A stretch of 64,000 bases of DNA, taken from the NCBI RefSeq assembly GCF_037042905.1, contig NC_087247.1:5952001-6016000 (forward strand), given 5' to 3'. This DNA comes from Lytechinus pictus. Lineage: Eukaryota. The stretch's first letter is position 1, and the number at the start of each line of letters is the position of its first letter. The notes below the pieces were generated by a model. It saw only the letters and a list, made by a program, of their open reading frames with translations, had not been told where the DNA came from and ran no database searches. Made by a program: the position numbers and the translations under genes. Positions 2,206 to 27,099 of the stretch are shown here, in pieces.

Positions 2206-2371
2206 CTGGATATGAGAAGTCAATTTTCACCAACTTGCCCCACTGCCTCCTTAAACTTATTGAAACTTATTGAAGCATGAAGGAAGCTGACAAAATTAGA
2301 AGATAGACCTGGAAGCTCGACTGCTAATTCAGCATTCTTCCAGTATTTGCGGTAAGGTAAGGTAAGGTAAG
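1..2371 (+). mobile_element. CR1-type non-LTR retrotransposon, 3' portion with short 3' UTR and (GGTAA)4 tail
   Basis: ORF2 is followed by about 145 bp of UTR and a microsatellite tail GGTAAGGTAAGGTAAGGTAAG at 2351-2371, not poly(A). Confidence 0.9.
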
Positions 2372-4051: not shown

Positions 4052-4052
4052 C

Positions 4053-4235
4053 TATTGACTGGGCTCAATTGAGAACATTGGCTGCAATAATGAACCTTAA
4101 TTGAATATTGATGTAAATATATCTATATGTTAATATGTGTATATATTGACTGGGCTCAATTGAGAACATTGGCTGCAATAATGAACCTTAATTGAATATT
4201 GATGTAAATATATCTATATGTTAATATGTGTATAT
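4053..4235. repeat. Tandem duplication, 2 x about 91 bp
   Basis: ATTGACTGGGCTCAATTGAGAAC... occurs at 4054 and 4145. Confidence 0.9.
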
Positions 4236-5728
4236 ATATATATGAATATGTGAATATATAAATATTTAATTATGTAAATATTCCACACACCAGACTCAAC
4301 ATACTCAATCTCCTTGGATGTCAGCTGGCAGCTATTAGTGTCTTCTGTATTTACGTAAGTATATCTAAGTTTCCTTCTTCTTCTTTCCTGTCTCTTTATC
4401 CAACTCACTTTCTGACTTTCTTCTGCGTTCTTACTTTCTATGTTTTTCACTTTTTGTTCACATGAAGAGCCCACAAACTCTTCATATATATATGCATACA
4501 TCCTACGAAAGGGCGAAGTCTATGAATGGGTTTATTCCGTCATAATACACATATAGACGTAAAGACGAAGGTAGAGGGCGTTAAGGCGCATTACGAACAT
4601 TGAAAGAAGACAAAAAAATTTGCTTTAAACACAGATGTAGAGAAATATATATATATATATATATTTATATATACATAAATATATATACATTTATTTATAT
4701 TTACATAATACATATGTGAATACATATGACATCATTATCTGCACCTGCAGATATGCAACTTTGAATTAAAGAAATGAGAATTAAGATACATATTTTTGGG
4801 GTTTGCACTCATCTTATTATAATTTTATTACAATTTATAAAGATATGAATTAAGTTTTGTGCAAAAGGAATATTGGATTTTTTTATAAAAAGAGAAACTA
4901 AATAAGACAAACGATGGAGAGGGGAGCTGGATCGGGGGGGGGGGAGTAGATTGAGAGAGAGAGAGAGGGGGGTAGCATCATATTCATGAACTTAAAATGC
5001 AGTGATACATAACATAAGAGAATGAAGAAGTCTGAAAATGAGTAATATTTATAAAGTAAAATAATTGTCAAAAGATATAAAATATCATGTAAAATGGCGG
5101 CAATATGTTGAAAGGAAATGCAAAACAAAATTAACTTTATACGCGATTGAGTTCTACTTATATTGAATTCCTCTTCTTCAAAATAAATCATTCATGAATA
5201 TAAGAAAGATATATTATGTAAAAATTAAATCAATTCATAAGATTATTCAAAATAAATCATTAAAGCAAAATCAATCGATTATAATCAATCAGCCTCGGGA
5301 ATCAGCCAAATTAATCAATCACTCATGCACTCACCCTGCCAACATATATGACCAATGGCATGCACATTAATAACAAGCTTATTCAATTGAAAGAAAATAG
5401 AAACAGGCCTCCATTTGACCATAATACCAATCCAACAATAATTAGTCAGTCTCAGACTGCGACTGTCGACTGAATAAAATTGATACACATCTGTAATGTA
5501 AATAAAACTCAATAGACAATAAACGTAAACACACACTGAAACGTGAGTGAATGCTTTTTACTCTCTAGGAGCCCGATTCATTGTCATTGATGACATTAGA
5601 CCAAACGTTAGATCTAGTAACGTTACTTACATGGCATCGATTGCGCTAGTAAGTTAGTCTTGAGGACTCCATGATGATGTCTTTTAAAACAAATTTGACA
5701 TATACTTCTGACATATATGTCAAATTTG

Positions 5729-7321
5729 GGCAAAATCGTGATATAGGCCCCGCTCGAGTAAAACTTGTAATCGATCATACCTCAATATATAGGTTGCTAA
5801 CTTCAGCTCACTATATATACTCGTGATATAGGCCCCGCTGCTGTGTTGAATGGCTCAGAATGTCCGTTCGCGGGGCCTGTTTCACGAGTATAATACTATA
5901 ATCGTTATATAGGCCCCGCACTACGGCACTTCAGACACTCCAACACAGTAGCGGGGCCTGTATCACGAGTATATTATTAAGCTTGCATCCTAAGATAATC
6001 GCGAAACTGGCCCCGTAAGCCCCAGGACCACGTTATTTTCCATGATATAACAGTGCAAGGGGCCTCGATAACGAGTATACTAATAGCTAGCCGTCATCCG
6101 AGCCCCACGCACGTGCGAATGCTGGGGAAAAGCGCATTGGACGGGGCCAGTTTCGTGATTATCTTAGGATGCAAACTTAATAATATACTCGTGATACAGG
6201 CCCCGCTACTGTGTTGGAGTGTCTGAAGTGCCGTAGTGCGGGGCCTATATAACGATTATAGTATTATACTCGTGAAACAGGCCCCGCGAACGGACATTCT
6301 GAGCCATTCAACACAGCAGCGGGGCCTATATCACGAGTATATATAGTGAGCTGAAGTTAGCAACCTAGATATTGAGGTATGATCGATTACAATTTTTTTC
6401 TCGAGCGGGGCCTATATCACGAGTATGCCAATAATATACTCGTGATACAGGCCCCGCTACTGTGTTGGAGTGTCTGAAGTGCCGTAGTGCGGGGCCTATA
6501 TAACGATTATAGTATTATACTCGTGAAACAGGCCCCGCGAACGGACATTCTGAGCCATTCAACACAGCAGCGGGGCCTATATCACGAGTATGATGGGGTG
6601 TCCAAACTTCGCGCACTTTTCAAAAATATTCATCAGGCTTAATTTTGTTCACAAAATATTCATAATTTATACAAAAACAATTCAAGAAATAGTTACCACA
6701 TTGACGGCAAGATCGTGAACTATAAAATCATGGACGAAAATGTAAAGTAGGTCAAGGGGTTTCGCCGGTATCGCGATCTCAAAATTCTATTCCGATCGGC
6801 GAATGCGGGCTGTGCTGGAAAACCGTTCAGAAAAGTGTGACCTAACTTCGCGCACCAAATCTTTTGTGGAGATTTAAACAAAAACTCAAGTTCAAAAAGT
6901 GAAAAATTAAATCAGATTGATGGCAAAATGCTATGGAATCGGTTAGTACCACATTTAACTCACATTTTTGATGATTTCTGCTTGCAAAATGGTGATATCG
7001 TGATGCTTGTGATTTCTTCAAAACGGGCGCTAGCGGTGACAAATTTGCCGATCTTTTGCCAATATTTTCATGAATACTGAACTCATCCTAAAAAAAATTT
7101 CATTATACGGTAATTTTAGGTCGCTTTTCACGTTGATGATGTCAGATTTTAAGGATATTGGCTAGTTTTTTAGATAAGGACCGTCCGCGAAGTATGGACA
7201 CGCGCGAAGTTTGGACACACTGCCATATAATAGTGAGCTGAAGTTAGCAACCTAGAATAGATATTGAGGTATGATCGATTACAATTTTTTTCTCGAGCGG
7301 GGCCTATATCACGAGTATGCC
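5729..7321. mobile_element. Non-autonomous Merlin-family element (internal-deletion derivative of 7341-26504)
   Basis: It has the same termini GGCAAAATCGTGATATAGG...CCTATATCACGAGTATGCC and an 8-bp TSD CAAATTTG (5721-5728, 7322-7329). The left arm is fused to the right arm at 6016/6017. The right-end segment is duplicated (6179-6429 and 6430-7321). Confidence 0.9.
6591..7225. mobile_element. MITE nested in the small Merlin element
   Basis: Inverted GTGTCCAAACTTCGCGC near both ends. It interrupts the host motif CACGAGTATATATAGTGAGC, probably at a TA. Confidence 0.8.
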
Positions 7322-7340
7322 CAAATTTGTTTTAAAAGAC

Positions 7341-9394
7341 GGCAAAATCGTGATATAGGCCCCGCTCGAGAAACACTTGTAATCGATCACATACCTCAAT
7401 ATCTAGGTTGCTAACTTCAGCTCACTATATATACTCGTGATATAGGCCCCGCTGCTGTGTTGAATGGCTTAGGATGTCCGTTCGCGGGGCCTGTTTCACG
7501 AGTATAATATTATAACCGTTATATAGGCCCCGCACTACCGCACTTCAGACACTCCAACACAGTAGCGGGGCCTCTATCACGAGTATATATTAAGGCTTGC
7601 ATCCTAAGATAGTCGCGAAACCGGCCCCGTCCAATGCGCTTGTCCCAGCATTCGCACGTGTGTGGGGCTCGGATGACGGCTATTAGTATACTCGTTATCG
7701 AGGCCCCTTGCACTGTTATATCATGGAAAATAGCGTGGTCGTGGGGCTTGTTTCCCCGGTGAGAGATATCATGGGCGGCGCTGTAGGGGGCCGGGGGGGG
7801 GGGGGGGTGGGGGGGGGCTCCAATTTATTTTTCAAATAAACAAGGAGAGAGAATAATAGAATAATAAACATTTATTTGTGGATTTATTTATATATTGATG
7901 TAGTTATTTATTTATCAATCTATTTGAATTGATTAATTGATGATCGTTCGTTTTTATTCTTTTTATAAGTGGAAGTTCATTTATTTATATATTTATCAAT
8001 TTGCCCCTTGCACTGTTATATCATGGAAAATAGCGTGGTCGTGGGGCTTGTTTCCCCGGTGAGAGATATCATGGGCGGCGCTGTAGGGGGCCGGGGGGGG
8101 GGCTCCAATTTATTTTTCAAATAAACAAGGAGAGAGAATAATAGAATAATAAACATTTATTTGTGGATTTATTTATATATTGATGTAGTTATTTATTTAT
8201 CAATCTATTTGAATTGATTAATTGATGATCGTTCGTTTTTATTCTTTTTATAAGTGGAAGTTCATTTATTTATTTATCAATTTATTTTGATTAATTAATA
8301 TATTTATATTCATTCATTATTCGTTCAATTTTTTTGTTTTCATTTTTTTTCTTTTGTGATATAGAGAGTCAGAGGTATCATTCGTTTTTAATTCTTTTTA
8401 TGTGTGAAAGTTCATTTATTTATTCATTTATTTATTATCTATTTAATGATTTAGTTATTATATTTTCAATTTTATTTGTTTGTTATCTGAGTGGCGTGCG
8501 TAGGCCTAGGTCTTATGTTGATACAGGGTCGTACATGTCATTTATTTTTCATTTAGTTTTATTCATTCTGTAAGTTATAGTGGCTATACAAAATGATGAC
8601 GGCAACCATTGTAAAGCTTAGAATATTACTCTTTCATCTGGTATAACTCAGAAGATTCCTCGATCATTCAGGCATGAATGACTTTAACAATTTGAAGAAA
8701 GTATAGATATATAATCTGAATTGAAAAATAATAATTTACCTTTTTTTAATTAGGAAATGAATTAGTCGTAGTTGAATGGTGTTATCATTATTTTCGTTAC
8801 ATAAATGGAATTTATATTATTTTTGTTTAAGGTCATATCCACCCCAGAAAAATGTTGATTTGAATAAATATAGAAAAATCAAACTAGCATAACGCTGGAA
8901 AATTTCATCAAAATCCGATGTAAAATAAGAAAGTTGTGATATTTTAAAGTTCGCTTATTTTTCACAAAACAGTGATATGCACAATCATTTGCATGCAAAT
9001 GATACAGTCGATGATGTCCCTCGCAATTTCTTTTGTTTTTTCTTTTCTTTTTACAGAATTGACAATAAGGGCCCACGTGAATGAACCATATAACAATTCT
9101 AATTTCCGCATGTTCAGGAAAGAATTAATCATTGTTTCACTTTACAACAAGGAGAAAATTGGAAAACACTAAAGAAATAGTGACTGGATGGCGTCATCAG
9201 TTTCCTCATTTGCATACTGACCTGGATGTGCATATATAACTATTATTTTAAATTAAACTAAACTTCAAAATGTCATAACTTTCTTATTTTACATCCGATT
9301 TTGATGGAATGTTTAGCGTTATGATAATTGGATTTTTGTCCTTTTTAGCGTTATGATAATTGGATTTTTCTCTTTTTATTCAAATCAACTTTTT
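7341..9394 (+). repeat. Left long TIR of the giant Merlin element
   Basis: Reverse-complement match to 24046-26504. Contains about 8 TCGTGATATAGGCCCCGC-like motifs in both orientations and an internal duplication (7703-8002 vs 8003-8285). Confidence 0.88.
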
Positions 9395-9417
9395 GTTGGG
9401 GTGGACTTGTCCATTAA
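8827..9417. mobile_element. TTAA-flanked Kolobok-like MITE embedded in the left TIR
   Basis: TTAA-GGTCATATCCACCCC...GGGGTGGACTTGTCCA-TTAA with long imperfect inverted repeats. A mirror copy lies at 24046-24582. Confidence 0.75.
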
Positions 9418-10739
9418 ATTCAACAATTGATGTATTTGTTTTTATTAAATTTTTTGTTTTATTTGATGTTAGGCCAACCATTATCGTTAATTATTTTCTC
9501 TTTTTTNNNNNNNNNNNNNNNNNNNNNNNNNNNNNNNNNNNNNNNNNNNNNNNNNNNNNNNNNNNNNNNNNNNNNNNNNNNNNNNNNNNNNNNNNNNNNN
9601 NNNNNNNNNNNNNNNNNNNNNNNNNNNNNNNNNNNNNNNNNATGCATTACTATTTCAAGTTCTCCGTATTGTTTCACTTATTGATTTCCTGGTTTATTCA
9701 TATATTCATTTATTCGTTCATATTTGCACTGTTTTGGGGGGAAAAATGTGGTGTATTTATTGACACGATATGCCTACCCTTAAAGGGGTAGTTTACCATG
9801 ACGTAGTTGGCGAAAATTAAAGCAGAAACATTAAAAAAATATTCTTAAAGGTTTGATGAAAATACGTCAAGGAATAAAATAATAATAAAATTATTTTTGA
9901 TGACACAGACGAGAATATTTTCCAAAATTTGTGCAGACCTATGATACGTACAAGTAATGAATGTTTATGAGTGCAATGGACAGAATAATTCATGAGGTGA
10001 AAGATGAAATGATCCATTCAGATCCATTCAACGAGGCGTAGCCGAGTTGAATGGATCCTTATTTAATTATAACTATTATAAGTAATTCTGATTGTATAGT
10101 ATTATTTGTTTTAGGAACATTCATTCTTGCATGAGAAACTAGAATCGTCAGAAAATTGGAAAACAATAGTAAAGAAATATTACATTATATTTATCACTTT
10201 TCACAATACGATAAGAGATGTATAGCGTGTCAAGAGTCGCGATTGTGACTTATTTTAGTATTGGTAAATTTTTTTTTTGATTAACAGGACAGCGACCCCT
10301 TTTTTTTTTAATAGCATGCTTCATTTCTTTAGTATTATTCAGGAGCCACAGAAGGGAATGGATATAAATTTTGACAAGTAAAATCAACGAAATTTCAAGC
10401 TGTCCATATTTTTGCGTATTATTATATTATATTGTTTAGTCGATAAGTAATTTCATAGAAAAGACTGGTTCACAAATCATAAAACATAACTGCCCGCCAC
10501 CCTCCTCTCTCGGAGGTCTGAAGAGGATGTGTTAATTTAATTGACTAAACACCCCGTGCCCTACCCGGTTGTCTCGAAAGGGCGTGGCCACTATTTCCGC
10601 GAACGCAGACTGTTTTCTTAAGCCGTTATATCATATTGAAATATATTATATTATATCATATCATATCATATCATATTATATATTTGTTTATGCATAACTT
10701 TGATATTTTTATTCTTATGATAGTTTTATTAGTTTGCTC

Positions 10740-10771
10740 CATAGAGATATATATACTATTATGTCTCTATG
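10740..10771. mobile_element. 32-bp CATAGAGA...TCTCTATG remnant (P-like excision footprint)
   Basis: Inverted ends, flanked by near-identical 8-mers GTTTGCTC and GTTCGCTC. Confidence 0.6.
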
Positions 10772-11104
10772 GTTCGCTCCTTGCTGTAACTTAATTGTAT
10801 TTTAATAGCAGTATATTTGGGCTTTCTCGACCGGGGTAAAATCTTGCCAAATCATAATATTCAACTTCATGATCTATTCCTATGATATTACCAACGGGTT
10901 ATTGTTCTTAATCTTTTTTCTTCTCCCCTACAACTCCTTCTTATTGCTGAAGTTTTTTTTTCTCTTCTTTTTCTTCTTCTCCTACTTCTTCCCCCATGCA
11001 TGCACCTTCACCCTTTTTTCTTATTTTCTTTTTATTCTTCCTCTCCTCCTCTTCTTCTCCATCTTCTGCTTCCCCTCCTTTTCCTTCTCCTTCCTCACCC
11101 TCTT

Positions 11105-12889
11105 CAGCGGTGGATTCAGCTTTCGCCCGAAAAAAAAAGGGGGGGGGGGCGGCGGCGATTTTCTTTTCCAGCTGACATATTTTTCCAAAAAGTCGCTCAA
11201 AGTTATACTAATGAAAAACAACATGATATAATCTCATAAGCTCTATTTCCAAAATGCGAGCGCGAAGCGCGAGCAAATTTTGTTGAAAATTTCTTGTATT
11301 TTGTCCCGAAAATTGAATACTAATATTCTGGGTAATGTTCGTGATTCTGAACAAGATGCTATATAACTAGAAAATAACTGCGAGCGCGATTACGTTCTGG
11401 CCTGATGGAAAAGGGACCTGTTACTGAGGACTGTTTGCAGTTAGCCATGAAGACGATACATATTTTTTAAGTTAAAAAATGCGAGCGCGAACTTAAAAAT
11501 TAAAACATTCCGACCTTAAAAAAGTGGACATTCTTTGCACTTTTTTTTGTACATTTTTGTTTGGGTATATAAGTAAACAATTGATGCAAGGGAGAAATTT
11601 TAGATATCGAGACCTAAAAAACGGGAAACGCTATTCTTGTTTTTAAATCATGAAAGGATGGATAATTGGGTATCTTCCTACATCAATAATGCGAGCACGG
11701 AGCACAAAGCGCGAGCATAAAATTTTTGAAAATCTAAATCTGAAACTACTAATTTAAGTATGATTTGAATAAAGAACGAGCTGTGTATCTCATTTAACCT
11801 GCGTCTGCGTGTTTTTATACCTATAATCTTGGCATTCTGAATACATTTATTAATCACGAAAATCACTAATGCGAGCGCGAGGTGAAAATATTTGATATTC
11901 CAATCTGAAAAGGGTCAATTTAAGCACTATGTAGGGAAATTTTGATGTGGATCGCACTTAATAAAGGATGCAAGTGCGACCTATAATATTTTTATTACTA
12001 TTTTGACCGAGGATCGGGACATTCTAAAGACATAAATTGTCATCATGTGAAAATGATGACTATCTTCCTTTCTCTCGACCTAAGCGCGAGATAAAACTGG
12101 TTGATATTCATTTCTAAAAATGGGGACAATTTTGTTATTAGGAATTAATGAAAATGTTTTCTTATCAATCTCATTTGTCCTAGTGAGATCGTGAAAATTA
12201 TTTATATTAAGACCTAAAAACTGCACATTTTAAGCATTTGTGTAGTTATGAATAGGATGCATGTGCTAATATATTTCGAAGAATTAATGCGAATCGCGAG
12301 CCGAAATATTTGATATTAAAACCGTCATGAAAATTGTATTTTTTGTAGTTTGTTATAGAATTAATATAGAGGTATAACTCACCAATCAAAATGCAAGCGC
12401 GCAGCGCTAGCTGATATTATTGTACGTGATATTGATATTATACGTTCTGACTATCACACATGAACAGGGATATTTTGAGAGTTTTGTGGAATATACGAAA
12501 ATAATAGGTACTTGCCAAATTAATAATACGAGCGCGCAGCGCGTGCTGAAAATCTTGATATTCAGACCATAATACGGACATTCTTGTACAAAAGACTTAT
12601 AACAATCGATTTGTAACTCAAAGCGTGAAAAATTAAGCTCCATATCAACATATTGAGCAAGATATGTATCTATCGAACAGGCAATCCGAGCTCAAAGCGC
12701 GAGCGAAAATTTTGTATGGTGACATGAAATATTTTTTTCCAAATCTTCCTGTCACCTTATTTTATTCACTCGTCAACCTCCTCTTATTCTTCCTTTTTTC
12801 CTCTTCTCTTTCCCTTTTTTCTTTAATTCCCCTTTTTTGCGGTTTTTGCTCCGCCAATAGGGAGCCAGGGGCCCCTGGATGCGCCTATG
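11105..12889. mobile_element. 1.8-kb non-autonomous TIR element with degenerate GCGAGCGCGAAGCGCGAG internal repeats
   Basis: Ends CAGCGGTGGATTCAG / CTGGATGCGCCTATG, with a 5-bp direct repeat CTCTT on both sides. It splits a CT-rich tract (10900-11104, 12890-13080). Confidence 0.65.
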
Positions 12890-13417
12890 CTCTTCTATTG
12901 TCTCTTCTTCTCCTTCTTCTGATTCTTCTTCCTATCCTTCTTCCTTATCCTCTTCTGCCTCTTCATTTTCTTCTTCGTCTTTTTCTGCTTCTTCTTATCC
13001 TTCTCTTTCTTCTTCTGCTTCTTTTTCTTATCCTTCTTCTTCTCGCCCCTTTCCTTCTCCTTTCTCAACTTCTTCAACAAAAACAAGTGAGGGAGAGAGT
13101 GTGTGTGATCAAGAGAGAGGGAGAGAAAATGTAATGAGAAATGAATCGAAAAGAATATGACAGCGACGACCCTGGCCGCTCGCACCAAAATGAGAACCGA
13201 GCTACCGGATCTCAAACATCCTTCTTCGCCCATTTAAATATCCCTCTCCCTTTAAGAGTTTCTTGAGAAAATTAGATGGAAAGTGGATTGCGTTAATGAA
13301 AGAAGAGTGTATTTTGCAGCTCTTGATTTTGTTTATATGTTAGGTGCTGCTATTAAAACATTTTTTAATAACAAATTGGTATCTTAAAGGTCGCAAATAA
13401 TAAGATCATCCCCCTTC

Positions 13418-16266: not shown

Positions 16267-16602
16267 TTCTTCTGGATATCACTCATAAATAGGCACGTGA
16301 TGCTACTTCAGTATGCTCTGTNNNNNNNNNNNNNNNNNNNNNNNNNNNNNNNNNNNNNNNNNNNNNNNNNNNNNNNNNNNNNNNNNNNNNNNNNNNNNNN
16401 NNNNNNNNNNNNNNNNNNNNNNNNNNNNNNNNNNNNNNNNNNNNNNNNNNNNNNNNNNNNNNNATCATTACCTAGTAAATTGTTCCTCATCTTGGAAAGA
16501 AGCTAATGCTAATTCATATATGTGGATATATACTGAATTATAGGGCAGCATCCTTATGATCAGGTGCGTATTTAGGGGTGATTTTCAGAAGAAAATGCCA
16601 AA

Positions 16603-16635
<33 letters not shown>

Positions 16636-17119
16636 AAGTGTCTGCAGAATATAGACTACATCGTCACAGCGCTGGGCAGTGTGTTTGATTCGGGCGAGGG
16701 GGATCTCCCTGGTTGACAACCTTCGGGTAACACACATTATGTAATGATACACAAGGTGCTCATGAGATGAAGGCACTAATTTTATCAGCCAATGGGACAT
16801 CGACCCGGGTAGAAGGCGCAAAATGCAAATCGCTTCTTCAGGGCCGGGCTAACCTATCCCACGTTTGGCAGCTAGCCTCTACTCCCTCGATTGGCTCAAT
16901 TAATGTGCATAAAGATTACCTGTCCATATATAGCCTATAGGCCTACGGACGGCATGTCTCTTATTTTGAACTAATTTTCGGGTTAAATCTGTTGATGTTG
17001 CAATCCCAACAGTCGTTGTGGTTAGTGGATGACTTGATAAATGGATGAAATAGAAGATAGCAGTCAATTATGAGCTTCATATGTCATGAACCACCTGTAT
17101 TCGCACCGTGTATGTTTGT

Positions 17120-17332
17120 ATCAGTCATGAATAATTAAATCAGGTACATGCGGGCCTGATTTGCATAATACCGTCACACGGACGAGATTTGCATATTGTC
17201 GATTTCGCTGGCAGAAAAGGGGGGGAAAGTAGGGGTCCAATCACACGTTTCACAAGATGGAGGCATACGGTCCTCCAAAAAGGTATAAATTGTGTGAAAA
17301 TTTGAGGTTGACCATCAGTATCCTTCAAGATG
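17120..17332 (+). promoter_or_regulatory. Putative transposase promoter (mirrored at 15551-15763)
   Basis: Octamers ATTTGCAT at 17159 and 17187, CCAAT at 17237, TATAAAT at 17284, Inr-like TCAGT at 17315, and YY1-like CAAGATGG at 17253 and over the ATG. Confidence 0.6.
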
Positions 17333-18697
17333 GCTGGCAACTTTCGTAAGCGCGTCGATCCTTCAACATGCAGGGTTTCCCATTTTTACAATCCTTGGAG
17401 TTTCTATAGCCTGTTTCTTAGTCCTCCAAGAGATGTGGTGGAGTGGATGATGGGGCAAGGGCTGCTCTGCGAGAAGAAGGTGTGCCCCCGATGCCAGAGA
17501 GACTGCCGTCTGGTTCAGCGCAAAGGCAAACATCATGGGTTCCGGTGGCGTTGCCGTAAGAACGACGTCCACAAGGATGTGGAGTTCTCAATCACGGAGA
17601 ATTCATTCTTCAGGAGAAGCCACTTCAGCTTCCAGGACATCATGGAGTTTATCCGTGATTTTCTCCTGAAGAACTCCCTCCGATGTATGGCTACCCAGGC
17701 GGGACTGGACTACAAGAAGACGGCGGTCGACTGGGCCAACTACATAAGGGATCTGTTTCGACAATATGTGTCCGAGGTCTACAGCCCTGACGCCCCCATG
17801 AAGCTGTCTGGTGAAGTCGAGATAGATGAGTCACTGTTCGGCAGACGTTGCAAATACCATAAAGGCAACCCAAACGTCGGCATGAAGGTGTGGATCGTCG
17901 GCATGGTGGAGAGGTCGACGAACAAAATCATTCTCTACCCCGTAGAGGATAGGAAGGAAGACACACTGGTCCACATCATTACCCGCCACGTCGAGGTGGG
18001 GTCGACAATCCTGACCGACGGCTGGGCTGGCTACGCCTCACTGAACGATCTCGGCTACGAGCATTTCAACGTCATTCATAAAGAGACGTTCAAAGCCCGC
18101 TACCGACATGCGACTACGGGGGTGATCAAGGAGGTGTGTACCAACCGCATCGAGGGCGCCTGGAAGCATGCCAAGGATCACTTCAGACGGATCAACGGGA
18201 CCACCATGAGCAATTTCGAGGCGCATCTCGCCGAAGTCATCTGGCGCAACCACACTTCCGGGCAAAACATCTTCGACGCCTTCTTTGCCCTGATGCGCCG
18301 ATTCTACCCCCTGACTACGGCCAACCTCCTCGACGCCGAATCGCCTCTCTTTGACACGTGGACAGGTGAAAAGGCAGACTTGGCAGACATGTCGCTCTCG
18401 AGAATGAGTGACGATGAGGACGACGATGACGACGGTGACCAGGAAGTCGACGACGTCCCTGCAGCTACCTCCACGCCGACGAACAGGCCCGACATGACAT
18501 CCAACATGCCGAGGAAGCGGAAAAAGATGCCAGCGAGGAGGGTCATCTGCCCAGCTGACTACATCGAGATTAGGAAGGAAGGAAGCGGAGGTGAAGAGGA
18601 GGGTGCCGGTCCAAGCAGCCGTCAACCAGCCACGGCAAACAACTACTCAAGGAGCGCCTTCACCTGGGGCGAAGGCGACGACAGCGACTTCGAATGA
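17330..18697 (+). CDS. Merlin (IS1595/ISXO2-like DDE) transposase, copy 2
   Basis: Protein identical to 14186-15553 in the ORF track, with the same DDE motifs. Confidence 0.93.
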   Translation: MAGNFRKRVDPSTCRVSHFYNPWSFYSLFLSPPRDVVEWMMGQGLLCEKKVCPRCQRDCRLVQRKGKHHGFRWRCRKNDVHKDVEFSITENSFFRRSHFSFQDIMEFIRDFLLKNSLRCMATQAGLDYKKTAVDWANYIRDLFRQYVSEVYSPDAPMKLSGEVEIDESLFGRRCKYHKGNPNVGMKVWIVGMVERSTNKIILYPVEDRKEDTLVHIITRHVEVGSTILTDGWAGYASLNDLGYEHFNVIHKETFKARYRHATTGVIKEVCTNRIEGAWKHAKDHFRRINGTTMSNFEAHLAEVIWRNHTSGQNIFDAFFALMRRFYPLTTANLLDAESPLFDTWTGEKADLADMSLSRMSDDEDDDDDGDQEVDDVPAATSTPTNRPDMTSNMPRKRKKMPARRVICPADYIEIRKEGSGGEEEGAGPSSRQPATANNYSRSAFTWGEGDDSDFE

Positions 18698-19423
18698 CTC
18701 TCATGAGTCATTTTGGCTTGAGATTTAATCTCGCCTCTAAACACAACGGCTCTTTTCAGAGCCACCAAATTACCAAGAAAGAAACTGAATAGATATGTCT
18801 CTATTTCCCTCTTAAACAAATTGAAAAACACCCTGCACTATTTTCGTCAATGAATAATTATGGTTAGGCAATTGATTTTTAACACAGAAAAAATACAGTA
18901 TCAACAGATGCGATTTTCAAATAAAATACATAATTGGCAATTTGTTCTAATAAAAGAAAAAAAATTAATAATGAAAATATAAAGACAGGGATAAACCTCA
19001 AAACACCCCTAATAAAAAGCACTATTTTCGTCAATGAATTATTATGGTTAAGCAATTGATTTTTAAACTAGAAAAAAAAATAGTATCAACAGATGCGATT
19101 TTCAAATAAAATATATAATTGACAATTTGTTCTAATAAAAGAATATAAATAAATAATAAAAATATAAAGACAGGGATAAACCTCTATGCACCCCTAATAA
19201 AAAGTAAGGAAATGAATCCCTCAACATGAGAAACAGTGGCCGTAATCCCCCCCCCCCCCCACCCGAAAATATTAATGAACAGTGAAGTGATAATTCACGA
19301 TTGATTAAATATTGAGAGAAATCACCCGAAATAGTCCCCCAAATATAATAAGAATGACAGACTGGACTTAGAAAGTGGATAATGGAAAGAATCTCGTATA
19401 AACATATTGACTAATAAACCTTT

Positions 19424-20024
19424 GGCTGAAAATAGTATGATTTATATGCCTACAAATAAAGAAAATCAGATAAACAAAACACTGAACATTTGATCAAAAT
19501 CGGACAAGGAATAACAAAGTTATGGCATTTTGAAAATTTGCATTATTCCGATGAAACAATTATGGGTATGTCATCATGAATATTCAATGATTATGAGCAA
19601 ATTGGTGATGTCATATCCCTACTTGTTCTTCTGTATTATGAAAATTAGGTTGATTCAAAAAAATTTCTACGAAGAACTTAAAACATTGGATTGACAACTG
19701 ATTTAGTGCATTAGATATTCATTGCTGCAACTTATTTCATTATAAAGGAGACACATTATTCACACATATATTATGAAAAAATGAAACAATGATTTCGTGT
19801 AATAACATAAGAAAAAGGAAAGTGGGGATGTGACATCATCAGCCCACCTAATGAATATTCATGATGACGTACGTATAATCATTTTCACAAAATATTGCTT
19901 TACTAAAAATTCAATAACTTTTTTATCTGTAATACGATTTTGATGAATTTTTCAGCATTTTGCTATATGAATTTTACTCTATTTATTCACATATAAATAT
20001 TTTCAACCGGGAGTATCCTTTTAA
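19424..20024. mobile_element. Kolobok-like MITE (left end truncated), present in the right inner arm only
   Basis: Same family as 42560-43152 (GGCTGAAAAT..., GTGGGGATGTGACATCATCAGCCCACC). Ends GGAGTATCCTT-TTAA. Absent from the left arm at about 13500. Confidence 0.75.
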
Positions 20025-22573
20025 TGTATAAATACAAGAGATATGGAAATATATATAAACAATTCACCAATCGCTCCGTTTTAAATCTCCAGGTTTTCGG
20101 GGAGGGGGTTGATGCGACAGCCCCATGAAATCTTGAAATGTAATCTTTTTCCTTTTTTTTTTTCAATTTTTCTAAACAAAACCCACAGCACCCCCTACTT
20201 AAAAATCGTTCCCAGTGCCCTGCTTGATCGTTTATCGAACATGATTTGCATGGATATTTGTATTAATTTCTTTGTATTTGAGATTTACATAATTCTTGGT
20301 AGATAATCAGATCATGCTTCATAACTTTTTGGTTTGTATAATAATATTTCTTGAAGACGAAATGATGGGATTGTTGGGTTTAAGTGACATTTGTTACCTT
20401 GTATGGTATATATCAGTTTCGTCTAATAGTTTCTGGTACTTTCTGGAGGGTAACCCCCAATTACCTTTATTTGATTAGAATTATATTTAGGACATCCATC
20501 CAAAATGATATTGCTTGGTCATGTTTGAGTCATCTGTAAATATATATATTTTACATTGATTTATATGTAGTTTGATTACCACTAACATAGTATCCTGTTG
20601 CTAGGCGAAATCCAACAATTCTACAGGCGCTGTTGGTCATGCAGTTACATCATACTAGTTGGCAGTGACGTCACGAATCATGGCACACGCCACAGAAGTC
20701 ATGAATAATTAATGAGGAGTGATCGATCCGGGAAGTCAGCAATTCAGTTTTATTGTCTAAGGATTAACCCTGTTCACACTGAAACAACGTCTTATTTAGT
20801 TTTAGTTACACTTTATTTGGGAAGTACTAGGGTCTATTCATACTATAAAGTCTTAATCTAATTTAATTTTTAATCTGATTTAAATGTATTCCGTATACTT
20901 GCATCTTAAGTTAGATCATTTTTTTGGTAATTCATTATTATCCCAGGATATTGTTTTATAATTTTCCATCTAGATAATACTTAATCAATTTGTCAATTTA
21001 TTTAAACGTATAAGTCAACAATTAACTCAAATTATACAAATTTGTCACTATACACAGTTTTGAAGTCTCTCCAATCATCTGAATTTTATTTGCCCGATGA
21101 CTTAAACTGCAATCTCTTATACTACTTTTCTCCACATTACTTTCCATTAATACTCATCAGCGTGATTTCATTAATCTTGATCAATACGTTTGAGTGTTTT
21201 CCATGTTATATACAGTATTGACTTCAATATTGTATTTGCATACCCATGATACCATGTACATGTATGATTTATATATGCCTTTGTTTTTTCACTTTCCATT
21301 ACATCCCTCTTCTTTCATAGTACTCTCCCTACACCTTCAACTCCTTTTCCTGTCTATACATGCCTATACCACCCCCACTTATTTTGCATTGGGGGGGGGG
21401 GGGGGACAAAGCAAAAAAGAGGCTTATGTCGAAAGTGATGGGCATTTTGGTGCAAACGGATTTTTCATCTCGAGATTATTCTGCGTGAAGTGAAGTATGT
21501 GTGTTTTGTAGTATAATGAAGTTGAGCAAAGCCATTTTAAAGTGATTCTGATTGAAAAGATATGTAATAAGGCTCATCCGCGAGCGAGCGGGGCAGCGGT
21601 TTTGAAATAAATTCAAATCTGAGGTTGTAAAACTCGCTTTTTTGGCCTATTATATAGAGCACTATCTGTTAAAAGGGCATCCTTGCGAGACGTTGCAAGG
21701 GCGAAACGCAAGCTCAAACTTTGTTGTCACGCATTTTGGTTAAGAAGTTCGATATTCTCTAATCATATATTTCCATTCTCATACTTAAATTAGTCAAAAG
21801 GTATTCTGCTCATTTATGCAACGAATGTCCAGTTAAGATCAATTGTGAATGTCACTTTCACTTGCCCAGTAACCTGCACAATCAAAGTACTAAATGGGTA
21901 ATTTGTTTTTCTGTTCCAATCATGAAGAAGCGAAAACGGAAATCAGCCCCTTAGTTTGTTTTTTTCAAAACACAAAAACGAAATCACAACGAGAAAAACT
22001 TGTTGAACAAGATGCCCCCCCCCCCCTCTCTCTCTCACTCCTACATGTCAGCAGCTAGTGCTTAAATCATACCCTTATTGTCTCGATATATAATTTTATT
22101 ATCAACAAAATTCATCTCGAACTTCGATCGCATTCGCATCCTATTTGCAAGTGTGAAAAATTCAGCTCGTGCTCCTCTTTCATATCCTGGTCATGCGTCA
22201 CTGTAAAGTCCTTTTCATATTTTCAGTTCAGTAATTAGAATATTAAATAAACTTTTATTGTTTAGGGTTACAAAGAGAGCTTAGTGTGCTCCATTCATAG
22301 CTCGTAACACATGTATTATAAAAAAAAAACAGTTAGCGTTCTCGTTTAGTTCGTCCGTATAGGCATGGTAGGCCTATCTTGTTGGTAAAAATTAAAGTAC
22401 AATGTACATAAACTTCCATCCTAAGGTTATCACAACCCCCCCCCCCCCAAAAAAAAAAAAAAAAAAAAAAAAAACACCTCTTCCTCTTTGAGTGGCCGAC
22501 CAGGGATTTCATGAAAAGCAATGTGTCCAACCGGCCTGTACCCCCGCCCAGCCCCTTTAAAAGTACTGGACCT

Positions 22574-22746
22574 GGTGGGTGTTTCATAAAGCTGTTCGTA
22601 AGTTAAGAGCTACTTTAAGAACGACTGGTGATCCTTTCTTGTGGTAAATGGCATATTCATTGGCGATGGTTTGGCACATAAGAAAGGTTCACCAGTCGTT
22701 CTTAAAGTTGCTCTTAACTTACGAACAGCTTTATGAAACGGCACCC
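22574..22746. mobile_element. Short Harbinger-like MITE
   Basis: Inverted GTTTCATAAAGCTGTTCGTAAGTTAAGAGC arms. Confidence 0.75.
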
Positions 22747-23829
22747 CGTACCTATGTGTATATTTTTTTCCTGACGCATTCAACCAGACAGACCTATGCG
22801 CCACCAACTGTCTTCTCAAATTTGTGCAGCCCCCCCCTCCCCCTCCCCCGCTACGAAATCTCGGATCTATAAGGGGACACATTAAACTCCTGAAATAAAA
22901 TATCACAGAAAAGGAAAAAGTATAATAATTCGTGCATGATAATAAATCATAAGAACACATTGAGACACTTTTTCAGAAATTATTAAATCTTTTAATGAAA
23001 ACGGGATATCGGGGCGAGGGTGTATGAATTAGAAAATAATTGAACACCATAATAGGCGAAGAAAAAAATGCAATATTTGGATGGTGATTTAAGAAATATT
23101 AAGTTAATTATGGAGTATAGATATCCCTCAAGCCATAATGAAATTGACCAAAAGAAAATTCATAAACCTTCCCCGAATGAATATGCCTATTCGTTTTCTT
23201 TTCTGAACTTAAATGGATGAAAAGTGAGGAAGGGGGGGGGGGGGCATTATTGAAGGAATGAAAAAAAAAATTGATAATACTCAAGAAGCCTGATGAATGA
23301 TTCAATATTGAATAAGAGAAGAAAATCGATTTGATGATTTGTGATTGCAAATAGATGGATGATACATGAAGGAATAAATGGATTCATTCGCAGCATTACG
23401 TCAAGTGAAAGATTGACAAGAAGTCAAGAACTACATAATTTAATTATTAATGACACCTCCCTGCAAAAAAAAATAATCAAAATAAAATGCTGAATAAAAC
23501 GAGGTTATCAAATAACAAGCAAATATAAATTACGATGGATAATGGAACAAAAATATATATAAATGCCTAACGTTACATAGAAAACACTCCCCGAAAATAG
23601 CAAATGAATGAATCATTCACAGATTTATCAAAAGTTATTCAGAAAGCAGATCATTAAAGCAAAATATTAAAAACACGAGGGCGGCATCAGGTTGCGAGGG
23701 GCCAGGTTGATTTTTCTCTGAAAACTGAAGGATAACATGCCTAAAACAAAGTCGCTCACTCATAATATGGATCCTACCTCCATTGTCATGCAGAGTTTTT
23801 ATTCTCACTTCTTTATTATCCCCGTTGTT

Positions 23830-24045
23830 TTTTGGAAAATAAATTGGAGCCCCCCCCCCCCCCCGGCCCCCTACAGTGCCGCGCATGATATCTCTCACTG
23901 GGGAAACAAGCCCCACGACCATGTTATTTTCCATGATATAATAGTGTAAGGGGCCTCGATAACGATTATAATTGCCGTCATCCGACCGAGCCCCACACAC
24001 GTGCGAATGCTGGGACAAGCGCATTGGACGGGACCAATTTCGCGA
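23830..24045 (-). repeat. Extra internal fragment of the Merlin TIR
   Basis: Similar to 26030-26233 and the reverse complement of about 7612-7830. Directly abuts the truncated MITE copy at 24046. Confidence 0.85.
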
Positions 24046-26504
24046 CAAAAAGTTGATTTGAATAAAAAGAGAAAAATCAAACTATCGTAACGCTAAAAAT
24101 TCCATCAAAATCCGATGTAAAATAAGAAAGTTATGACATTTTGAAGTTTAGTTTGATTTAAAATAATAGTTATATATGCACATCCAGGTCAGTATGCAAA
24201 TGAGGAAACTGATGACGCCATCCAGTCACTATTTCTTTAGTATTTTCCAATTTTCTCCTCATTGTCAAGTGAAACAATAATTAATTCCTCCCTGAACATG
24301 TGGAAATTAGAATTGTTATATGGTTCATTCACGTGGGCCCTTATTGTCAATTCTGTAAAAAGGAAAGAAAAAACAAAGAAATTGCGAGGGACATCATCAA
24401 CTGTATCATTTGCATGCAAATGGGTTGTGCATATCACTGTTTTGTGAAAAATAAGCGAAACTTTAAAATATCACAACTTTCTTATTTTACATCGGGTTTT
24501 GATGAAATTTCCAGTGTTATGCTAGTTTGATTTTTCTATATTTATTCAAATCAACATTTTTCTGGGGTGGATATGACCTTAAACAAAAATAATATAAATT
24601 CCTTTTATGTAACGAAAATAATGATAACACCATTCAACTACGACTAATTCGTTTCCTAATTAAAAAAAGGTAAATGATTATTTTTCAATTCAGATTATAT
24701 ATCTGTACTTTCTTCAAATTGTTAAAGTCATTCATGCCTGAATGATCGAGGAATCTTCTGAGTTATACCAGATGAAAGAGTAGATATTCTAAGCTTTACA
24801 GTGATTGCCGTCATCATTTTGTATAGCCACTATAACTTACAGAATGAATAAAACTAAATGAAAACTAAATGAAATGTACGACCCTGTATCAACATAAGAC
24901 CTAAGCCTACGCACACCTCTCAGAATTGTAACAAACAAATACAATTGAAAATATAATAACTAAATAAATAAAAAGATAATAAATAAATGAATAAATAAAT
25001 GGACTTCCACACATAAAAAGAATTAAAAACGAATGATACCTCTGACTCTCTATATCACAAAAGAAAAAAGAACTGAAAACAAATGAAATAAATGAATGAA
25101 TAAATCAATCAATTGAAATAGATTGATAAATAAATTAAATGAACTTCCACATATAAAAAAGAATAAAAAACGAATGATACCTCTGACTCTCTATATCACA
25201 AAAGAATAAAAAAACTGAAAACAAATAAATAGAATGAATAAATATGAATACATTAATTAATCAATTGAAATAGATTGATAAATAAATAAATGAACTTCCA
25301 CTCATAAAAAGAATAAAAAACGAATGATACCTCTGACTCTGAAAACAAATGAAATAAATGAATGAATAAATCAATCAATTAAAATAGATTGATAAATAAA
25401 TTAAATGAACTTCCACATATAAAAAAGAATAAAAAACGAATGATACCTCTGACTCTCTATATCACAAAAGAATAAAAAAACTGAAAACAAATAAATAGAA
25501 TGAATAAATATGAATACATTAATTAATCAATTGAAATAGATTGATAAATAAATAAATGAACTTCCACTCATAAAAAGAATAAAAAACGAATGATACCTCT
25601 GACTCTCTATATCACAAAAGAAAAAAAGAACTGAAAACAAATGAAATAAATGAATGAATAAATCAATCAATTGAAATAGATTGATAAATAAATTAAATGA
25701 ACTTCCACTCATAAAAAGAATAAAAAACGAATGATACCTCTGATTTTCTATATCACAAAAGAAAACAAATTGAAAACAAATAAATTTAATGAATAATGAA
25801 TAAATATATATTAATTAATCAATTGAAATAGATTGATGAATAAATAAATGAACTTCCACTCATAAAAAAATAAAAAAACAAATGATACTCGACTCTCTAA
25901 ATGACAAAAGAAAATTAAACGATTAATGAATAAATTTAAATACATCAATTAATCAATTCAAATATATTGATAAATAAATAACGGCCTAAATAACTATATC
26001 AATATATAAAAACGGCAAATAAATTTAAAAAATAAATTGGAGCCCCCCCCCCCCCTCCCCTACAGCGCCGCCCATGATATCTCTCACCGGGGAAACAAGC
26101 CCCACGACCACGCTATTTTCCATGATATAACAGTGCAAGGGGCCTCGATAACGAGTATACTAATAGCCGTCATCCGAGCCCCACACACGTGCGAATGCTG
26201 GGACAAGCGCGTTGGACGGGGCCGATTTCGCGACTATCTTAGGATGCAACCTTAATATATACTCGTGATATAGGCCCCGCTACTGTGTTGGAGTGTCTGA
26301 AGTGCGGTAGTGCGGGGCCTATATAACGGTTATAGTATTATACTCGTGAAACAGGCCCCGCGAACGGACATTCTAAGCCATTCAACACAGCAGCGGGGCC
26401 TATATCACGAGTATATATAGTGAGCTGAAGTTAGCAACCTAGATATTGAGGTATGTGATCGATTACAATTTTTTCTCGAGCGGGGCCTATATCACGAGTA
26501 TGCC
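24046..26504 (-). repeat. Right long TIR of the giant Merlin element
   Basis: Mirror of 7341-9394, longer because of an expanded AT-rich array. Confidence 0.88.
24990..25960. repeat. AT-rich tandem array, about 7 units of 115-151 bp, inside the right TIR
   Basis: ACTTCCAC...GAATGATACCTCTGACTCT recurs at about 25003, 25143, 25294, 25409, 25560, 25701 and 25852. Confidence 0.85.
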
Positions 26505-27099
26505 TAAAAGACATCATCATGGAGTCCTCAAGACTACTAGTAAGTAGTAATAATTGCCACTCATTCTTCGCCTGGCTTCGGATTAGAGAGAACCGACATC
26601 AAATTGAATGTATCGGACTAAGTCTAACTTAAAAAATTAATTACCCTCTAGCAAACGGTTCATCATCCTTTTTCTTATGACCAGGTGTACCTCTCTTCTT
26701 CATAAACTGTATGAAAAGCTTGTATTCTTCTTCGAAAGCGTTAAGTACCGGATTTTTGTCCCCTGTGTAATATTTAGAAGAAGGTTGGGTGACTGCTTTT
26801 GCAGCTTTATGCTGCAGCATCATCGCCATCTTGATACAAAGTTGGGTTGCTAGGTTGCGTTCATTCTTAAAGTTGCGATTTCTTTCCACAAGGAAGAAAA
26901 ATGTGAGCATAAAACATTTCTATTGCATCTGAAATTCATCATACCGATTGGAATTTATTACCAAAATTTAAAGTTTTAATGTTGAATGAAATGATTTCAC
27001 ATTTTTTATCAATAATATATCTGAAATATCTTGGAGAAACAAAATATTCTCCCTGCAAGTCATAATGGACTCTCCTCGAATAATAGCATTATGCCGCGC

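What the first reader, a model, noticed from the sequence alone, without database searches (positions are those of the whole stretch)
5646..26545. Two Merlin-family elements inserted 11 bp apart into a 109-bp perfect hairpin element
Seen: removing 5729-7321 and 7341-26504, each with one TSD copy, rebuilds a perfect 50-bp/9-bp/50-bp palindrome (TAGTCTTGAGGACTCC...GGAGTCCTCAAGACTA) with its own 9-bp TSD. All three TSDs are unmutated, so the events are recent. Both insertions have the same orientation. Inference: either a target preference for cruciform or hairpin DNA, or local hopping next to an existing end. The host termini remain intact, so the whole 20.9-kb nest could in principle be mobilised.
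Basis: partly seen in the sequence, partly recalled or inferred. Interest (0 to 1): 0.78.

Follow-up and report, generated by a model that had tools for sequence, protein, structure and literature searches.

The report
Two Merlin transposons in one hairpin MITE
A tiny, perfectly palindromic jumping gene in a sea-urchin genome was hit twice, one helical turn apart, by jumping genes of the Merlin family; the nest is real and young, but it is an ordinary kind of transposon pile-up, with only a hint that this spot is a preferred landing site.

Summary
Cutting out 5729-7329 and 7341-26512 rebuilds a 109-bp element with perfect 50-bp arms and a 9-nt loop. It is flanked by the 9-bp duplication CTAGTAAGT, and the two inserts have 8-bp duplications CAAATTTG and TAAAAGAC.

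The inserts are Merlin elements: GG termini, 8-bp duplications, and two intact 455-aa IS1595-type DDE transposase genes in the large one.

Corrections:
- Insert 1 is composite. It is a 701-bp palindromic unit plus an exact second copy of its last 251 bp, and that copy is split by a very abundant TA-flanked MITE.
- Insert 2's 19-kb interior crosses two assembly gaps that I could not test. Only the join of its two ends is validated, because the hairpin halves lie on different contigs and match perfectly.

The hairpin is a multi-copy family. Contigs from two other individuals join a hairpin arm to a Merlin 5' end at the mirror image of insert 2's target. This points to a recurrent landing site rather than local hopping alone. 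Simple 8-bp duplications argue against integration into an extruded cruciform stem.

This is a new member of a known kind (nested or double insertion at a hot spot). Genome-wide targeting remains untested. Earlier notes of this scan describe insert 2 itself and other Merlin-type copies on other DNA of this genome.

The parts
5646..5654 (.). Left copy of the host hairpin's 9-bp target-site duplication, CTAGTAAGT
   Evidence: Identical to 26537-26545.
5655..5728 (.). Hairpin MITE positions 1-74: the left arm (1-50), the loop CTTCTGACA (51-59) and the start of the right arm, ending in insert 1's target CAAATTTG
   Evidence: The family border at 5655 is shown by 15 contigs with unlike flanks in each of two runs.
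5729..6429 (+). Insert 1, part a: a 701-bp non-coding Merlin unit. It matches insert 2's outer 288 bp of the 5' arm plus the outer 413 bp of the 3' arm. It is nearly palindromic and ends in a complete 3' terminus at 6409-6429.
   Evidence: (I4).
6430..7321 (+). Insert 1, part b: a second copy of the last 251 bp of the 3' arm (0 substitutions, 2 small indels against 6179-6429), interrupted by a MITE. Its terminus at 7301-7321 is the one flanked by the duplication.
   Evidence: (D4, D13, I10).
6589..7227 (.). Nested high-copy MITE flanked by TA (Tc1/mariner-like, Stowaway-type). Its inverted repeats read TATG..GTGTCCAAACTTCGCGC.
   Evidence: Family borders at 6588/6589 and 7227 come from 17-22 contigs with unlike flanks per run, and it has the highest word depth of the stretch. 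End alignment.
7322..7340 (.). Hairpin positions 67-85 as they now stand between the two inserts: the right copy of CAAATTTG, then TTT, then the left copy of TAAAAGAC
7341..26504 (+). Insert 2: an autonomous-type Merlin element as scaffolded (19,164 bp, including 277 N). Outer arms are 7341-9347 and 24063-26504. Unique stretches are 9348-13520 and 19369-24062. The central palindrome is 13521-16266 / 16635-19368.
   Evidence: The interior crosses two untested gaps.
14186..15553 (-). Merlin transposase ORF, 455 aa (left copy)
   Evidence: It lies in the 2360-nt stretch that is 100% complementary to the right copy (I1). ORF list.
17330..18697 (+). Merlin transposase ORF, 455 aa (right copy), with DDE_Tnp_IS1595 at residues 158-306
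   Evidence: Pfam 7e-23. D166, D230 and E275 are invariant among 12 relatives. Sea-urchin relatives are 43-61% identical.
26505..26536 (.). Hairpin positions 78-109: the right copy of TAAAAGAC and the outer right arm
26537..26545 (.). Right copy of the host hairpin's 9-bp duplication, CTAGTAAGT

Best explanation
This is a genuine, young nest of cut-and-paste DNA transposons.

SHOWN
- A 109-bp perfectly palindromic MITE of a multi-copy family inserted first, making a 9-bp duplication.
- Two different members of one Merlin family then integrated separately into its right arm. One is a 1.6-kb non-coding composite and the other a large transposase-bearing element. Each made its own 8-bp duplication. 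The two targets are 11 bp apart start to start, and the inserts share one orientation.

INFERRED
- The integrations went into ordinary duplex DNA by staggered 8-bp cuts.
- They landed together because the AT-rich A-tract/T-tract stretch of this MITE (CAAATTTG TTT TAAAAGAC) is a preferred, easily deformed target for this transposase.
- Reuse of the same 8-bp site in the opposite orientation elsewhere supports this. The case is then a double insertion at a hot spot, as known for P elements.
- Proximity effects (very local reinsertion) probably add to it.
For: - Perfect reconstruction of the hairpin and three perfect duplications.
- The hairpin halves lie on separate contigs yet match.
- Merlin identity.
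- The arms of the two inserts are 93.5-95.5% alike, so these were separate events involving different family members.
- The hairpin family is multi-copy with a sharp border at 5655.
- Contigs in runs X2 (depth 85) and X6 (depth 56) join hairpin letters up to 5685, plus one T, to a 5'-type Merlin end. That places an insertion at GTCTTTT(T), the mirror of TAAAAGAC. It is not the reverse of this locus's own 3' junction, which would read A followed by GGCATAC.
- Rough arithmetic, which rests on assumed copy numbers of about 50-100 and an assumed genome size of about 1 Gb (neither measured here): two copies within 11 bp anywhere would be expected about 1e-4 times.
- Palindromic, AT-rich target motifs are general for TIR elements (PMC3276498).
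- Same-family double insertions arise at strong target sites (PMC5932611).
Against: - The hot-spot evidence is one short junction contig per run in two runs. I could not read it in full or lay reads a second time.
- Its target differs by one letter (T for A).
- No other family member lies in the window.
- The one related element I could inspect, in L. variegatus, is not in a hairpin.
- Other Merlin-type copies noted in this genome were described in introns, with no hairpin host mentioned (unchecked notes).
- No read bridging 7321-7341 was shown, so the adjacency of the two inserts on one molecule rests on the assembly contig.
- The depth figures are not copy numbers, by the tool's own statement.
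Confidence: 0.55

Rival explanations
1. Local hopping or end-tethering. One Merlin element was already resident. The second came from a very close donor (sister chromatid, homologue or a neighbouring copy), or was captured by transposase bound to the resident end. It therefore landed one helical turn away in the same orientation. The hairpin host is incidental.
For: - Insert 1 carries an exact second copy of its last 251 bp, and the boundary of that copy is the exact transposon terminus. This is what a same-family, same-orientation insertion into the element itself, followed by deletion between direct repeats, would leave.
- Local hopping is documented for P, Ac, Sleeping Beauty and Tol2 (PMC2753552).
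- The large insert encodes intact transposase right beside the small one.
Against: - Known hopping intervals are kilobases to megabases, not 11 bp (PMC2753552).
- The arms of the two inserts differ by about 5%, so neither is a fresh copy of the other.
- No donor footprint or third copy lies in the 64-kb window.
- The junction in X2 and X6 points to the same site being used in another hairpin copy or allele, which proximity alone does not explain.
Confidence: 0.28
2. Structure-specific targeting. The transposase recognises the extruded cruciform or hairpin form of the 50/9/50 palindrome and integrates there.
For: - The host is a perfect palindrome with very high folding potential.
- Two, possibly three, hits fall in this family.
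- Cruciforms are efficient targets for RAG-mediated transposition, as cited in PMC2753552.
Against: - Both inserts are simple insertions with 8-bp duplications inside one arm. Strand transfer into an intrastrand stem would join both transposon ends to the same strand and give a rearrangement, not this product (inference from the DDE mechanism).
- The sites lie mid-stem, 8-15 and 19-26 bp from the loop, not at the loop or at the four-way junction.
- The L. variegatus relative is not in a palindrome.
Confidence: 0.1
3. Chance, or an assembly artefact. Either two unrelated insertions happen to be neighbours, or the assembler joined two alleles or loci, each with one insert.
For: - The assembly is gapped about every 7-30 kb.
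- Sea-urchin genomes are highly heterozygous (own knowledge).
- No bridging read was listed for 7321-7341.
Against: - The two junctions share only 19 bp, too little for an overlap assembler to join.
- Both lie in one contig that spans 1.6 kb of repeats, so it comes from long reads (inference).
- The expected number of such neighbours by chance is about 1e-4 under rough copy numbers.
- The hairpin reconstruction across contigs is perfect.
Confidence: 0.05

Closest known systems
Merlin superfamily of DNA transposons (related to bacterial IS1016/IS1595), as defined in PMC8101967 citing Feschotte 2004
   Same: IS1595-type DDE transposase domain with an intact D, D, E triad. Terminal 5'-GG. 8-bp target duplications. 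Non-coding deletion derivatives. Internal tandem repeats and imperfect terminal repeats are also reported in that survey.
   Different: The transposase has 455 aa. The inverted arms run to about 2 kb, against the quoted 24-462 bp. The element is 19 kb as scaffolded, with two diverging transposase copies. Each arm carries five copies of a 17-nt motif. The survey counted only 8 Merlin sequences in 2 echinoderm species.
Double insertion of same-family elements at strong target sites (P-element and other tandem dimers in Drosophila; McGurk and Barbash 2018, PMC5932611)
   Same: Two members of one family lie head to tail, each with its own target duplication, explained by a strong insertion site.
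   Different: There the two elements share one target, and the spacer between them is a single duplication-length stretch. Here there are two adjacent targets 11 bp apart with different duplications, and the host is a palindromic MITE rather than a promoter.
Palindromic, AT-rich target-site motifs of TIR transposons (PMC3276498; Tol2 in PMC2753552)
   Same: The targets are AT-rich, and one of them (CAAATTTG) is itself a perfect 8-bp palindrome.
   Different: Those motifs span about 8-14 bp centred on the duplication. Nothing there concerns a 109-bp hairpin. With 3-5 sites, no motif can be derived here.
Nested MITE insertions and insertion sequences that target palindromic repeats (rice and maize MITE nests; IS1397 and ISKpn1 in bacterial REP/BIME palindromes).
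   Same: A mobile element is found repeatedly inside a short palindromic repeat family.
   Different: The bacterial cases insert at the loop of the palindrome and belong to the IS3 family. Here the sites are mid-arm, and the evidence for recurrence is thin.

Membership tests
Merlin superfamily (inserts 1 and 2) | Transposase with a DDE_Tnp_IS1595 domain | tested here: met
   PF12762, E = 7e-23, covering profile positions 1-151 of 153, in the 455-aa ORF. All 120 listed relatives carry PF12762. This applies to insert 2. Insert 1 is non-coding and is assigned through its shared ends and arms (93.5-95.5% identity).
Merlin superfamily (inserts 1 and 2) | Conserved catalytic D, D, E residues | tested here: met
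   D166 (EIDES), D230 (TDGW) and E275 (TNRIEGAWK) are invariant in a 12-sequence alignment.
Merlin superfamily (inserts 1 and 2) | Terminal inverted repeats beginning with 5'-GG-3' | tested here: met
   GGCAAAATCGTGATATAGGCCCCGCTCGAG and GGCATACTCGTGATATAGGCCCCGCTCGAG at all five termini. The L. variegatus relative begins GGCATAATCGTGATATAG.
Merlin superfamily (inserts 1 and 2) | 8- or 9-bp target-site duplication | tested here: met
   CAAATTTG and TAAAAGAC, both perfect.
Merlin superfamily (inserts 1 and 2) | Inverted-repeat length within the quoted range of 24-462 bp | tested here: inconclusive
   The terminal 30 bp match with 2 mismatches. Similarity between the arms continues for about 290 bp in insert 1 and about 2 kb in insert 2. 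That is longer than the quoted range, but foldback-like Merlin variants with internal repeats are reported (PMC8101967).
MITE (the 109-bp hairpin host) | Short, non-coding, with terminal inverted repeats, a target duplication and many copies with different flanks | tested here: met
   109 bp, 50-bp perfect arms, 9-bp duplication. 15 contigs with unlike flanks end at 5655 in each of two runs, and word depth is in the thousands.
Merlin superfamily (the hairpin host) | 5'-GG termini | tested here: not met
   The ends read TAGTCTTGAGG... The 9-bp duplication alone would fit Merlin, Mutator or Foldback elements. The superfamily is left open, and no matching transposase was found in the window.
Same-site double insertion (tandem dimer in the sense of PMC5932611) | The two elements are separated by exactly one shared target duplication | tested here: not met
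   The spacer is 19 bp: CAAATTTG + TTT + TAAAAGAC. These are two different targets. It works like a double insertion at a hot spot but is not the strict same-site form.
Tc1/mariner-type MITE (nested element 6589-7227) | TA target duplication and terminal inverted repeats | tested here: met
   TA lies on both sides. Removing 6591-7227 restores the arm sequence apart from one TA-repeat letter. The inverted repeats are about 26 nt with a shared GTGTCCAAACTTCGCGC core. No transposase link was tested.

The most novel reading that the evidence does not exclude
This Merlin family homes to one defined 8-bp site (TAAAAGAC / GTCTTTTA) and its close neighbourhood inside a specific palindromic MITE family, using another selfish element as a safe harbour. 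That would be a site-preferring eukaryotic cut-and-paste transposon. The palindrome would offer each site twice, once in each orientation, in every copy.
Probability: 0.25. Interest if true: 0.6.

Novelty: new member of a known kind. Interest (0 to 1): 0.35.

Why it matters
Target choice of Merlin elements has, as far as I know, not been studied. The survey I read (PMC8101967) gives duplication lengths and a few small duplication logos. It found no clear consensus where several families could be compared, and it counted only 8 Merlin sequences in 2 echinoderm species.

If the hairpin MITE family proves to be a recurrent landing site, this family would be a natural case of a DNA transposon that parks inside other repeats. 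It comes with an apparently intact transposase that could be tested in a model sea urchin used for transgenesis.

As it stands, the locus is a clean, datable example of a transposon nest at least three layers deep, built by five or more insertion events. It also validates one scaffold join of the assembly. Otherwise it is ordinary.

Tried and rejected
- Other copies in the window: there are no further Merlin ends, hairpin copies, copies of the nested MITE or copies of the flank repeat. The in-window test of targeting was therefore impossible.
- The exact transposase is not on record in the assembly collection. The closest proteins are at most 61% identical, so no other copy of this family could be fetched through its protein.
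- A scan of metagenome contigs for the 25-nt terminus found nothing.
- The flanks of the hairpin share no direct or inverted repeat, so no further outer host element was found. Read depth does show that 5455-5654 is repetitive.
- The central palindrome as a separate nested element is rejected. Its edges (13521 and 19368) have no GG ends and no duplication: AAGTCAAT against TAGAAAGT.
- The two cores as one sequence assembled twice is rejected. Their flanks differ on both sides, and their outer edges are 97-99% alike, not 100%.
- The X2/X6 junction as the reverse complement of insert 2's own 3' junction, or as an inversion between the hairpin arms, is rejected. Both would give ...GTCTTTTA followed by GGCATAC, not T followed by GGCAAAA (reasoning).
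- The hairpin as a Tc1/mariner MITE with a TA duplication is rejected, because the 9-bp perfect direct repeat lies outside the TA.
- ORFs of the unique interior stretches have no Pfam match.
- The classic sea-urchin TU foldback papers could not be read.
- Sequence strings are not accepted by the findings search.


Full report
GAPS FIRST

The window has four N runs. Two lie inside the finding, at 9507-9641 and 16322-16463, and both are inside the large insert. I did not look up or fill their letters.

- Gap 1 lies 160 bp inside the inner edge of the left outer arm, in unique, AT-rich, non-coding sequence that has no partner elsewhere in the window.
- Gap 2 lies in the 368-bp unique spacer between the two arms of a central palindrome. 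Its two flanks are unlike each other.
- Continuity across either gap therefore cannot be tested from the window.
- No real reading frame crosses a gap. The listed ORF 9360-9791 is an artefact of reading through N. Both 455-aa ORFs lie clear of the gaps.

One join is validated indirectly. The left hairpin half and insert 2's 5' end are on contig 1-9506. The right half and the 3' end are on contig 16464-49958. The two sets fit together perfectly, which fixes the order and orientation of these two contigs. The middle contig 9642-16321 is not validated. The 19-kb length and the inner architecture of insert 2 are therefore provisional.

THE OBSERVATION

It is correct to the base.

- Host duplication: CTAGTAAGT at 5646-5654 and 26537-26545.
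- Insert 1 spans 5729-7321 and is flanked by CAAATTTG.
- Insert 2 spans 7341-26504 and is flanked by TAAAAGAC.
- Joining 5655-5728, 7330-7340 and 26513-26536 gives a 109-mer whose only non-self-complementary positions are five in the 9-nt loop.
- As single-stranded DNA it folds at -54.6 kcal/mol, 20 standard deviations below shuffles.
- In hairpin coordinates the two target windows are 67-74 and 78-85: 11 bp start to start, about one helical turn, with 3 bp between them.

WHAT THE INSERTS ARE

- The termini read GGCAAAATCGTGATATAGGCCCCGCTCGAG on the left and GGCATACTCGTG... (reverse complement) on the right in both inserts. They therefore share one orientation. The orientation is defined only by two terminal letters and a few subterminal differences.
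- Each arm carries five copies of a 17-nt motif, CGTGATATAGGCCCCGC, in alternating orientation within about 240 bp. There are 25 matches in the window, all in Merlin arms, against 0 expected. These are candidate transposase-binding sites (inference).
- Insert 2 holds two identical 455-aa ORFs pointing away from each other. Each has a complete DDE_Tnp_IS1595 domain (7e-23). D166, D230 and E275 are invariant among twelve relatives.
- The nearest proteins come from sea urchins: Strongylocentrotus purpuratus 52%, Lytechinus variegatus 61% over part of the length, Diadema 43%. Bivalves follow.
- Against the definition quoted in PMC8101967 (GG termini, 8-9-bp duplications, IS1595-type DDE), the Merlin assignment is met on every tested feature except arm length, which exceeds the quoted range.
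- A related 9.1-kb element in L. variegatus (L001:6215-15330) keeps the terminal motif GGCATAATCGTGATATAG and has 557-bp arms at 98%. Its duplication is decayed and it does not sit in a palindrome.
- An earlier follow-up of this scan names the genome Lytechinus pictus. My protein and DNA comparisons fit a Lytechinus-like sea urchin, but I did not verify the species.

INSERT 1 IS COMPOSITE

- 5729-6429 is a complete 701-bp unit. It equals insert 2's outer 288 bp of the 5' arm plus the outer 413 bp of the 3' arm, at about 94-95% identity.
- It ends in a full 3' terminus at 6409-6429.
- 6430-7321 follows directly. Once a nested element is removed, this stretch is an exact second copy of 6179-6429, with no substitution and two small indels.
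- The boundary of this 251-bp duplication is the exact transposon end. That points to a transposase-made event rather than a random tandem duplication.
- The simplest route is a same-orientation insertion of a sister copy at unit position 450/451, followed by deletion between the direct repeats (inference). One duplication copy would have been lost, so this cannot be proved.
- The nested element (6589-7227 with its TA flanks) is a Tc1/mariner-like MITE. Read-derived contigs give it sharp family borders and by far the highest depth of the stretch.

INSERT 2 AS SCAFFOLDED

- Outer arms: 7341-9347 and 24063-26504, at 93-97% identity, with different numbers of roughly 141-150-bp (3' arm) and 285-300-bp (5' arm) tandem repeats.
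- Two unique non-coding stretches of 4.2 and 4.7 kb.
- A central palindrome, 13521-16266 / 16635-19368, that is 100% identical over 2360 nt and 97-99% at its edges.
- The palindrome's edges have no GG ends and no duplication.
- The two cores have different flanks on both sides. They are therefore two real copies, not one sequence assembled twice. Whether both belong to this element depends on the untested gaps.

THE HOST

- The hairpin belongs to a multi-copy family. In two independent runs, 15 contigs with unlike flanks end exactly at 5655, and word depth in that bin is in the thousands.
- Its ends read TAGTC..., not GG, so it fails the Merlin test.
- A 9-bp duplication fits Mutator or Foldback elements, or the upper end of Merlin's range. 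Its superfamily stays open.
- The 200 bp to its left are also repetitive. I found no outer element with matching ends.

WHY THE TWO INSERTS LIE TOGETHER

Chance is unlikely. With an assumed 50-100 family copies in an assumed genome of about 1 Gb (rough figures; the depths are not copy numbers), two copies within 11 bp are expected about 1e-4 times.

Evidence for a preferred site:
- Contigs in runs X2 and X6, from two different samples and studies, join hairpin letters up to 5685, plus one T, to a 5'-type Merlin end. Their depths are similar to those of other unique junction contigs.
- This is an insertion at GTCTTTT(T), the mirror of TAAAAGAC. In other words, it is the same 8-bp site of the palindrome used in the opposite orientation.
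- It cannot be this locus's own 3' junction, or an inversion between the hairpin arms. Both would read A followed by GGCATAC.
- I could not read the contig in full, because only one reads call was allowed.

Evidence for proximity:
- The exact terminal duplication inside insert 1 shows that this family also reinserts into or beside itself.

Evidence against a cruciform target:
- A simple insertion with an 8-bp duplication inside one arm requires staggered cuts on the two complementary strands of ordinary duplex DNA.
- Strand transfer into an intrastrand stem would join both transposon ends to one strand and rearrange the palindrome (inference from the DDE mechanism).
- The sites are mid-arm, not at the loop or at the base of the stem.

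Both targets lie in an A-tract/T-tract run (CAAATTTG TTT TAAAAGAC), and one of them is itself a perfect 8-bp palindrome. This fits the general rule of AT-rich, palindromic, deformable target motifs for TIR elements (PMC3276498; Tol2 in PMC2753552). Same-family double insertions at strong sites are known for P elements and others (PMC5932611). Local hopping is known too, but over kilobases to megabases (PMC2753552).

AGE

- There is no mismatch in 75 paired positions (the 50 arm pairs plus the 25 duplication pairs). This bounds divergence per lineage below about 2% at 95%.
- The transposase ORFs are intact.
- The arms of the two inserts differ by about 5%. This reflects family diversity, not age in place.

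CONTEXT

- Upstream lie a reverse-transcriptase ORF (1-2205) and a DDE_1 transposase fragment (3352-3966).
- Exons of a PUS7L-like pseudouridine synthase gene lie at 29107-35639 on the plus strand, so the nest sits about 2.5 kb upstream of them.

VERDICT

- The nest is real and young, and it was correctly read.
- It is deeper than described: the hairpin, two Merlin inserts, a probable Merlin self-insertion, a TA-flanked MITE, and at least one foldback MITE inside insert 2 at 19488-20024.
- The Merlin label is supported.
- The cruciform idea is unlikely. A sequence or flexibility hot spot, with some help from proximity, is the best reading, but it rests on thin evidence.
- Mobilisation of the whole nest is speculation.
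- This is a new member of a known kind, of moderate to low interest unless the genome-wide test confirms homing to this MITE family.
- Earlier first-stage notes of this scan already describe insert 2 itself, and other notes describe Merlin-type copies on other DNA of this genome.

Noticed in passing
window 6589-7227: A TA-flanked MITE of about 635 bp (Tc1/mariner-like, with inverted repeats sharing GTGTCCAAACTTCGCGC). It is by far the most abundant repeat in the laid stretch, with summed word depth of 40,000-190,000. It is also present in a second species (run X10, a 1247-nt contig).
   Followed up: partly
window 6179-6429 and 6430-7321: An exact duplication of the last 251 bp of a Merlin element, with 0 substitutions. 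Its boundary is the transposon terminus itself, which suggests a self or sister-copy insertion followed by deletion.
   Followed up: partly
window 5658-5685 joined to 7341 onward (contigs of runs X2 and X6): A junction that is not in the window: a hairpin arm ...GATGTCTTTT, plus T, joined to a Merlin 5' end. It implies another Merlin insertion at the mirror of the TAAAAGAC target, in another hairpin copy or allele. It was not seen in run X1.
   Followed up: partly
window 13521-19368: A central palindrome with two intact transposase genes pointing away from each other. It is 100% identical over 2360 nt and 97-99% at the edges, has no duplication or GG ends at its borders, and has an assembly gap in its spacer. 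Other notes of this scan report similar twin-transposase palindromes of Tc1 in this genome.
   Followed up: partly
window 19488-20024, 42555-43157, 8849-9417 and 24047-24583: A foldback MITE family of about 550-600 bp. One copy lies inside insert 2's unique right stretch and one lies outside the nest (78% alike). Related modules form the inner ends of both outer arms of insert 2.
   Followed up: no
window 5736-5934, 6198-6252 and 7519-7691 (run X10, organism B): A differently labelled organism holds short contigs 97-100% identical to the Merlin arms, at low depth, but none of the unique flank. This could be a close relative, shared ancestry or transfer. The organism names are coded.
   Followed up: no
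L001:6215-15330: Lytechinus variegatus has a 9.1-kb Merlin element between a Piwi gene and a PCNA gene. It has 557-bp arms at 98%, the conserved end GGCATAATCGTGATATAG, a 286-aa transposase remnant and a decayed duplication (CCTTTATT against aCATTTATT).
   Followed up: partly
window 1-2205, 3352-3966 and 29107-35639: A reverse-transcriptase ORF running off the window's start, a DDE_1 (pogo-like) transposase fragment, and exons of a PUS7L-like pseudouridine synthase gene downstream of the nest.
   Followed up: no
window 5455-5654: The left flank of the hairpin is itself repetitive (word depth rising from about 90 to about 1300), so the hairpin may sit in yet another repeat. No matching right-hand partner was found.
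   Followed up: partly
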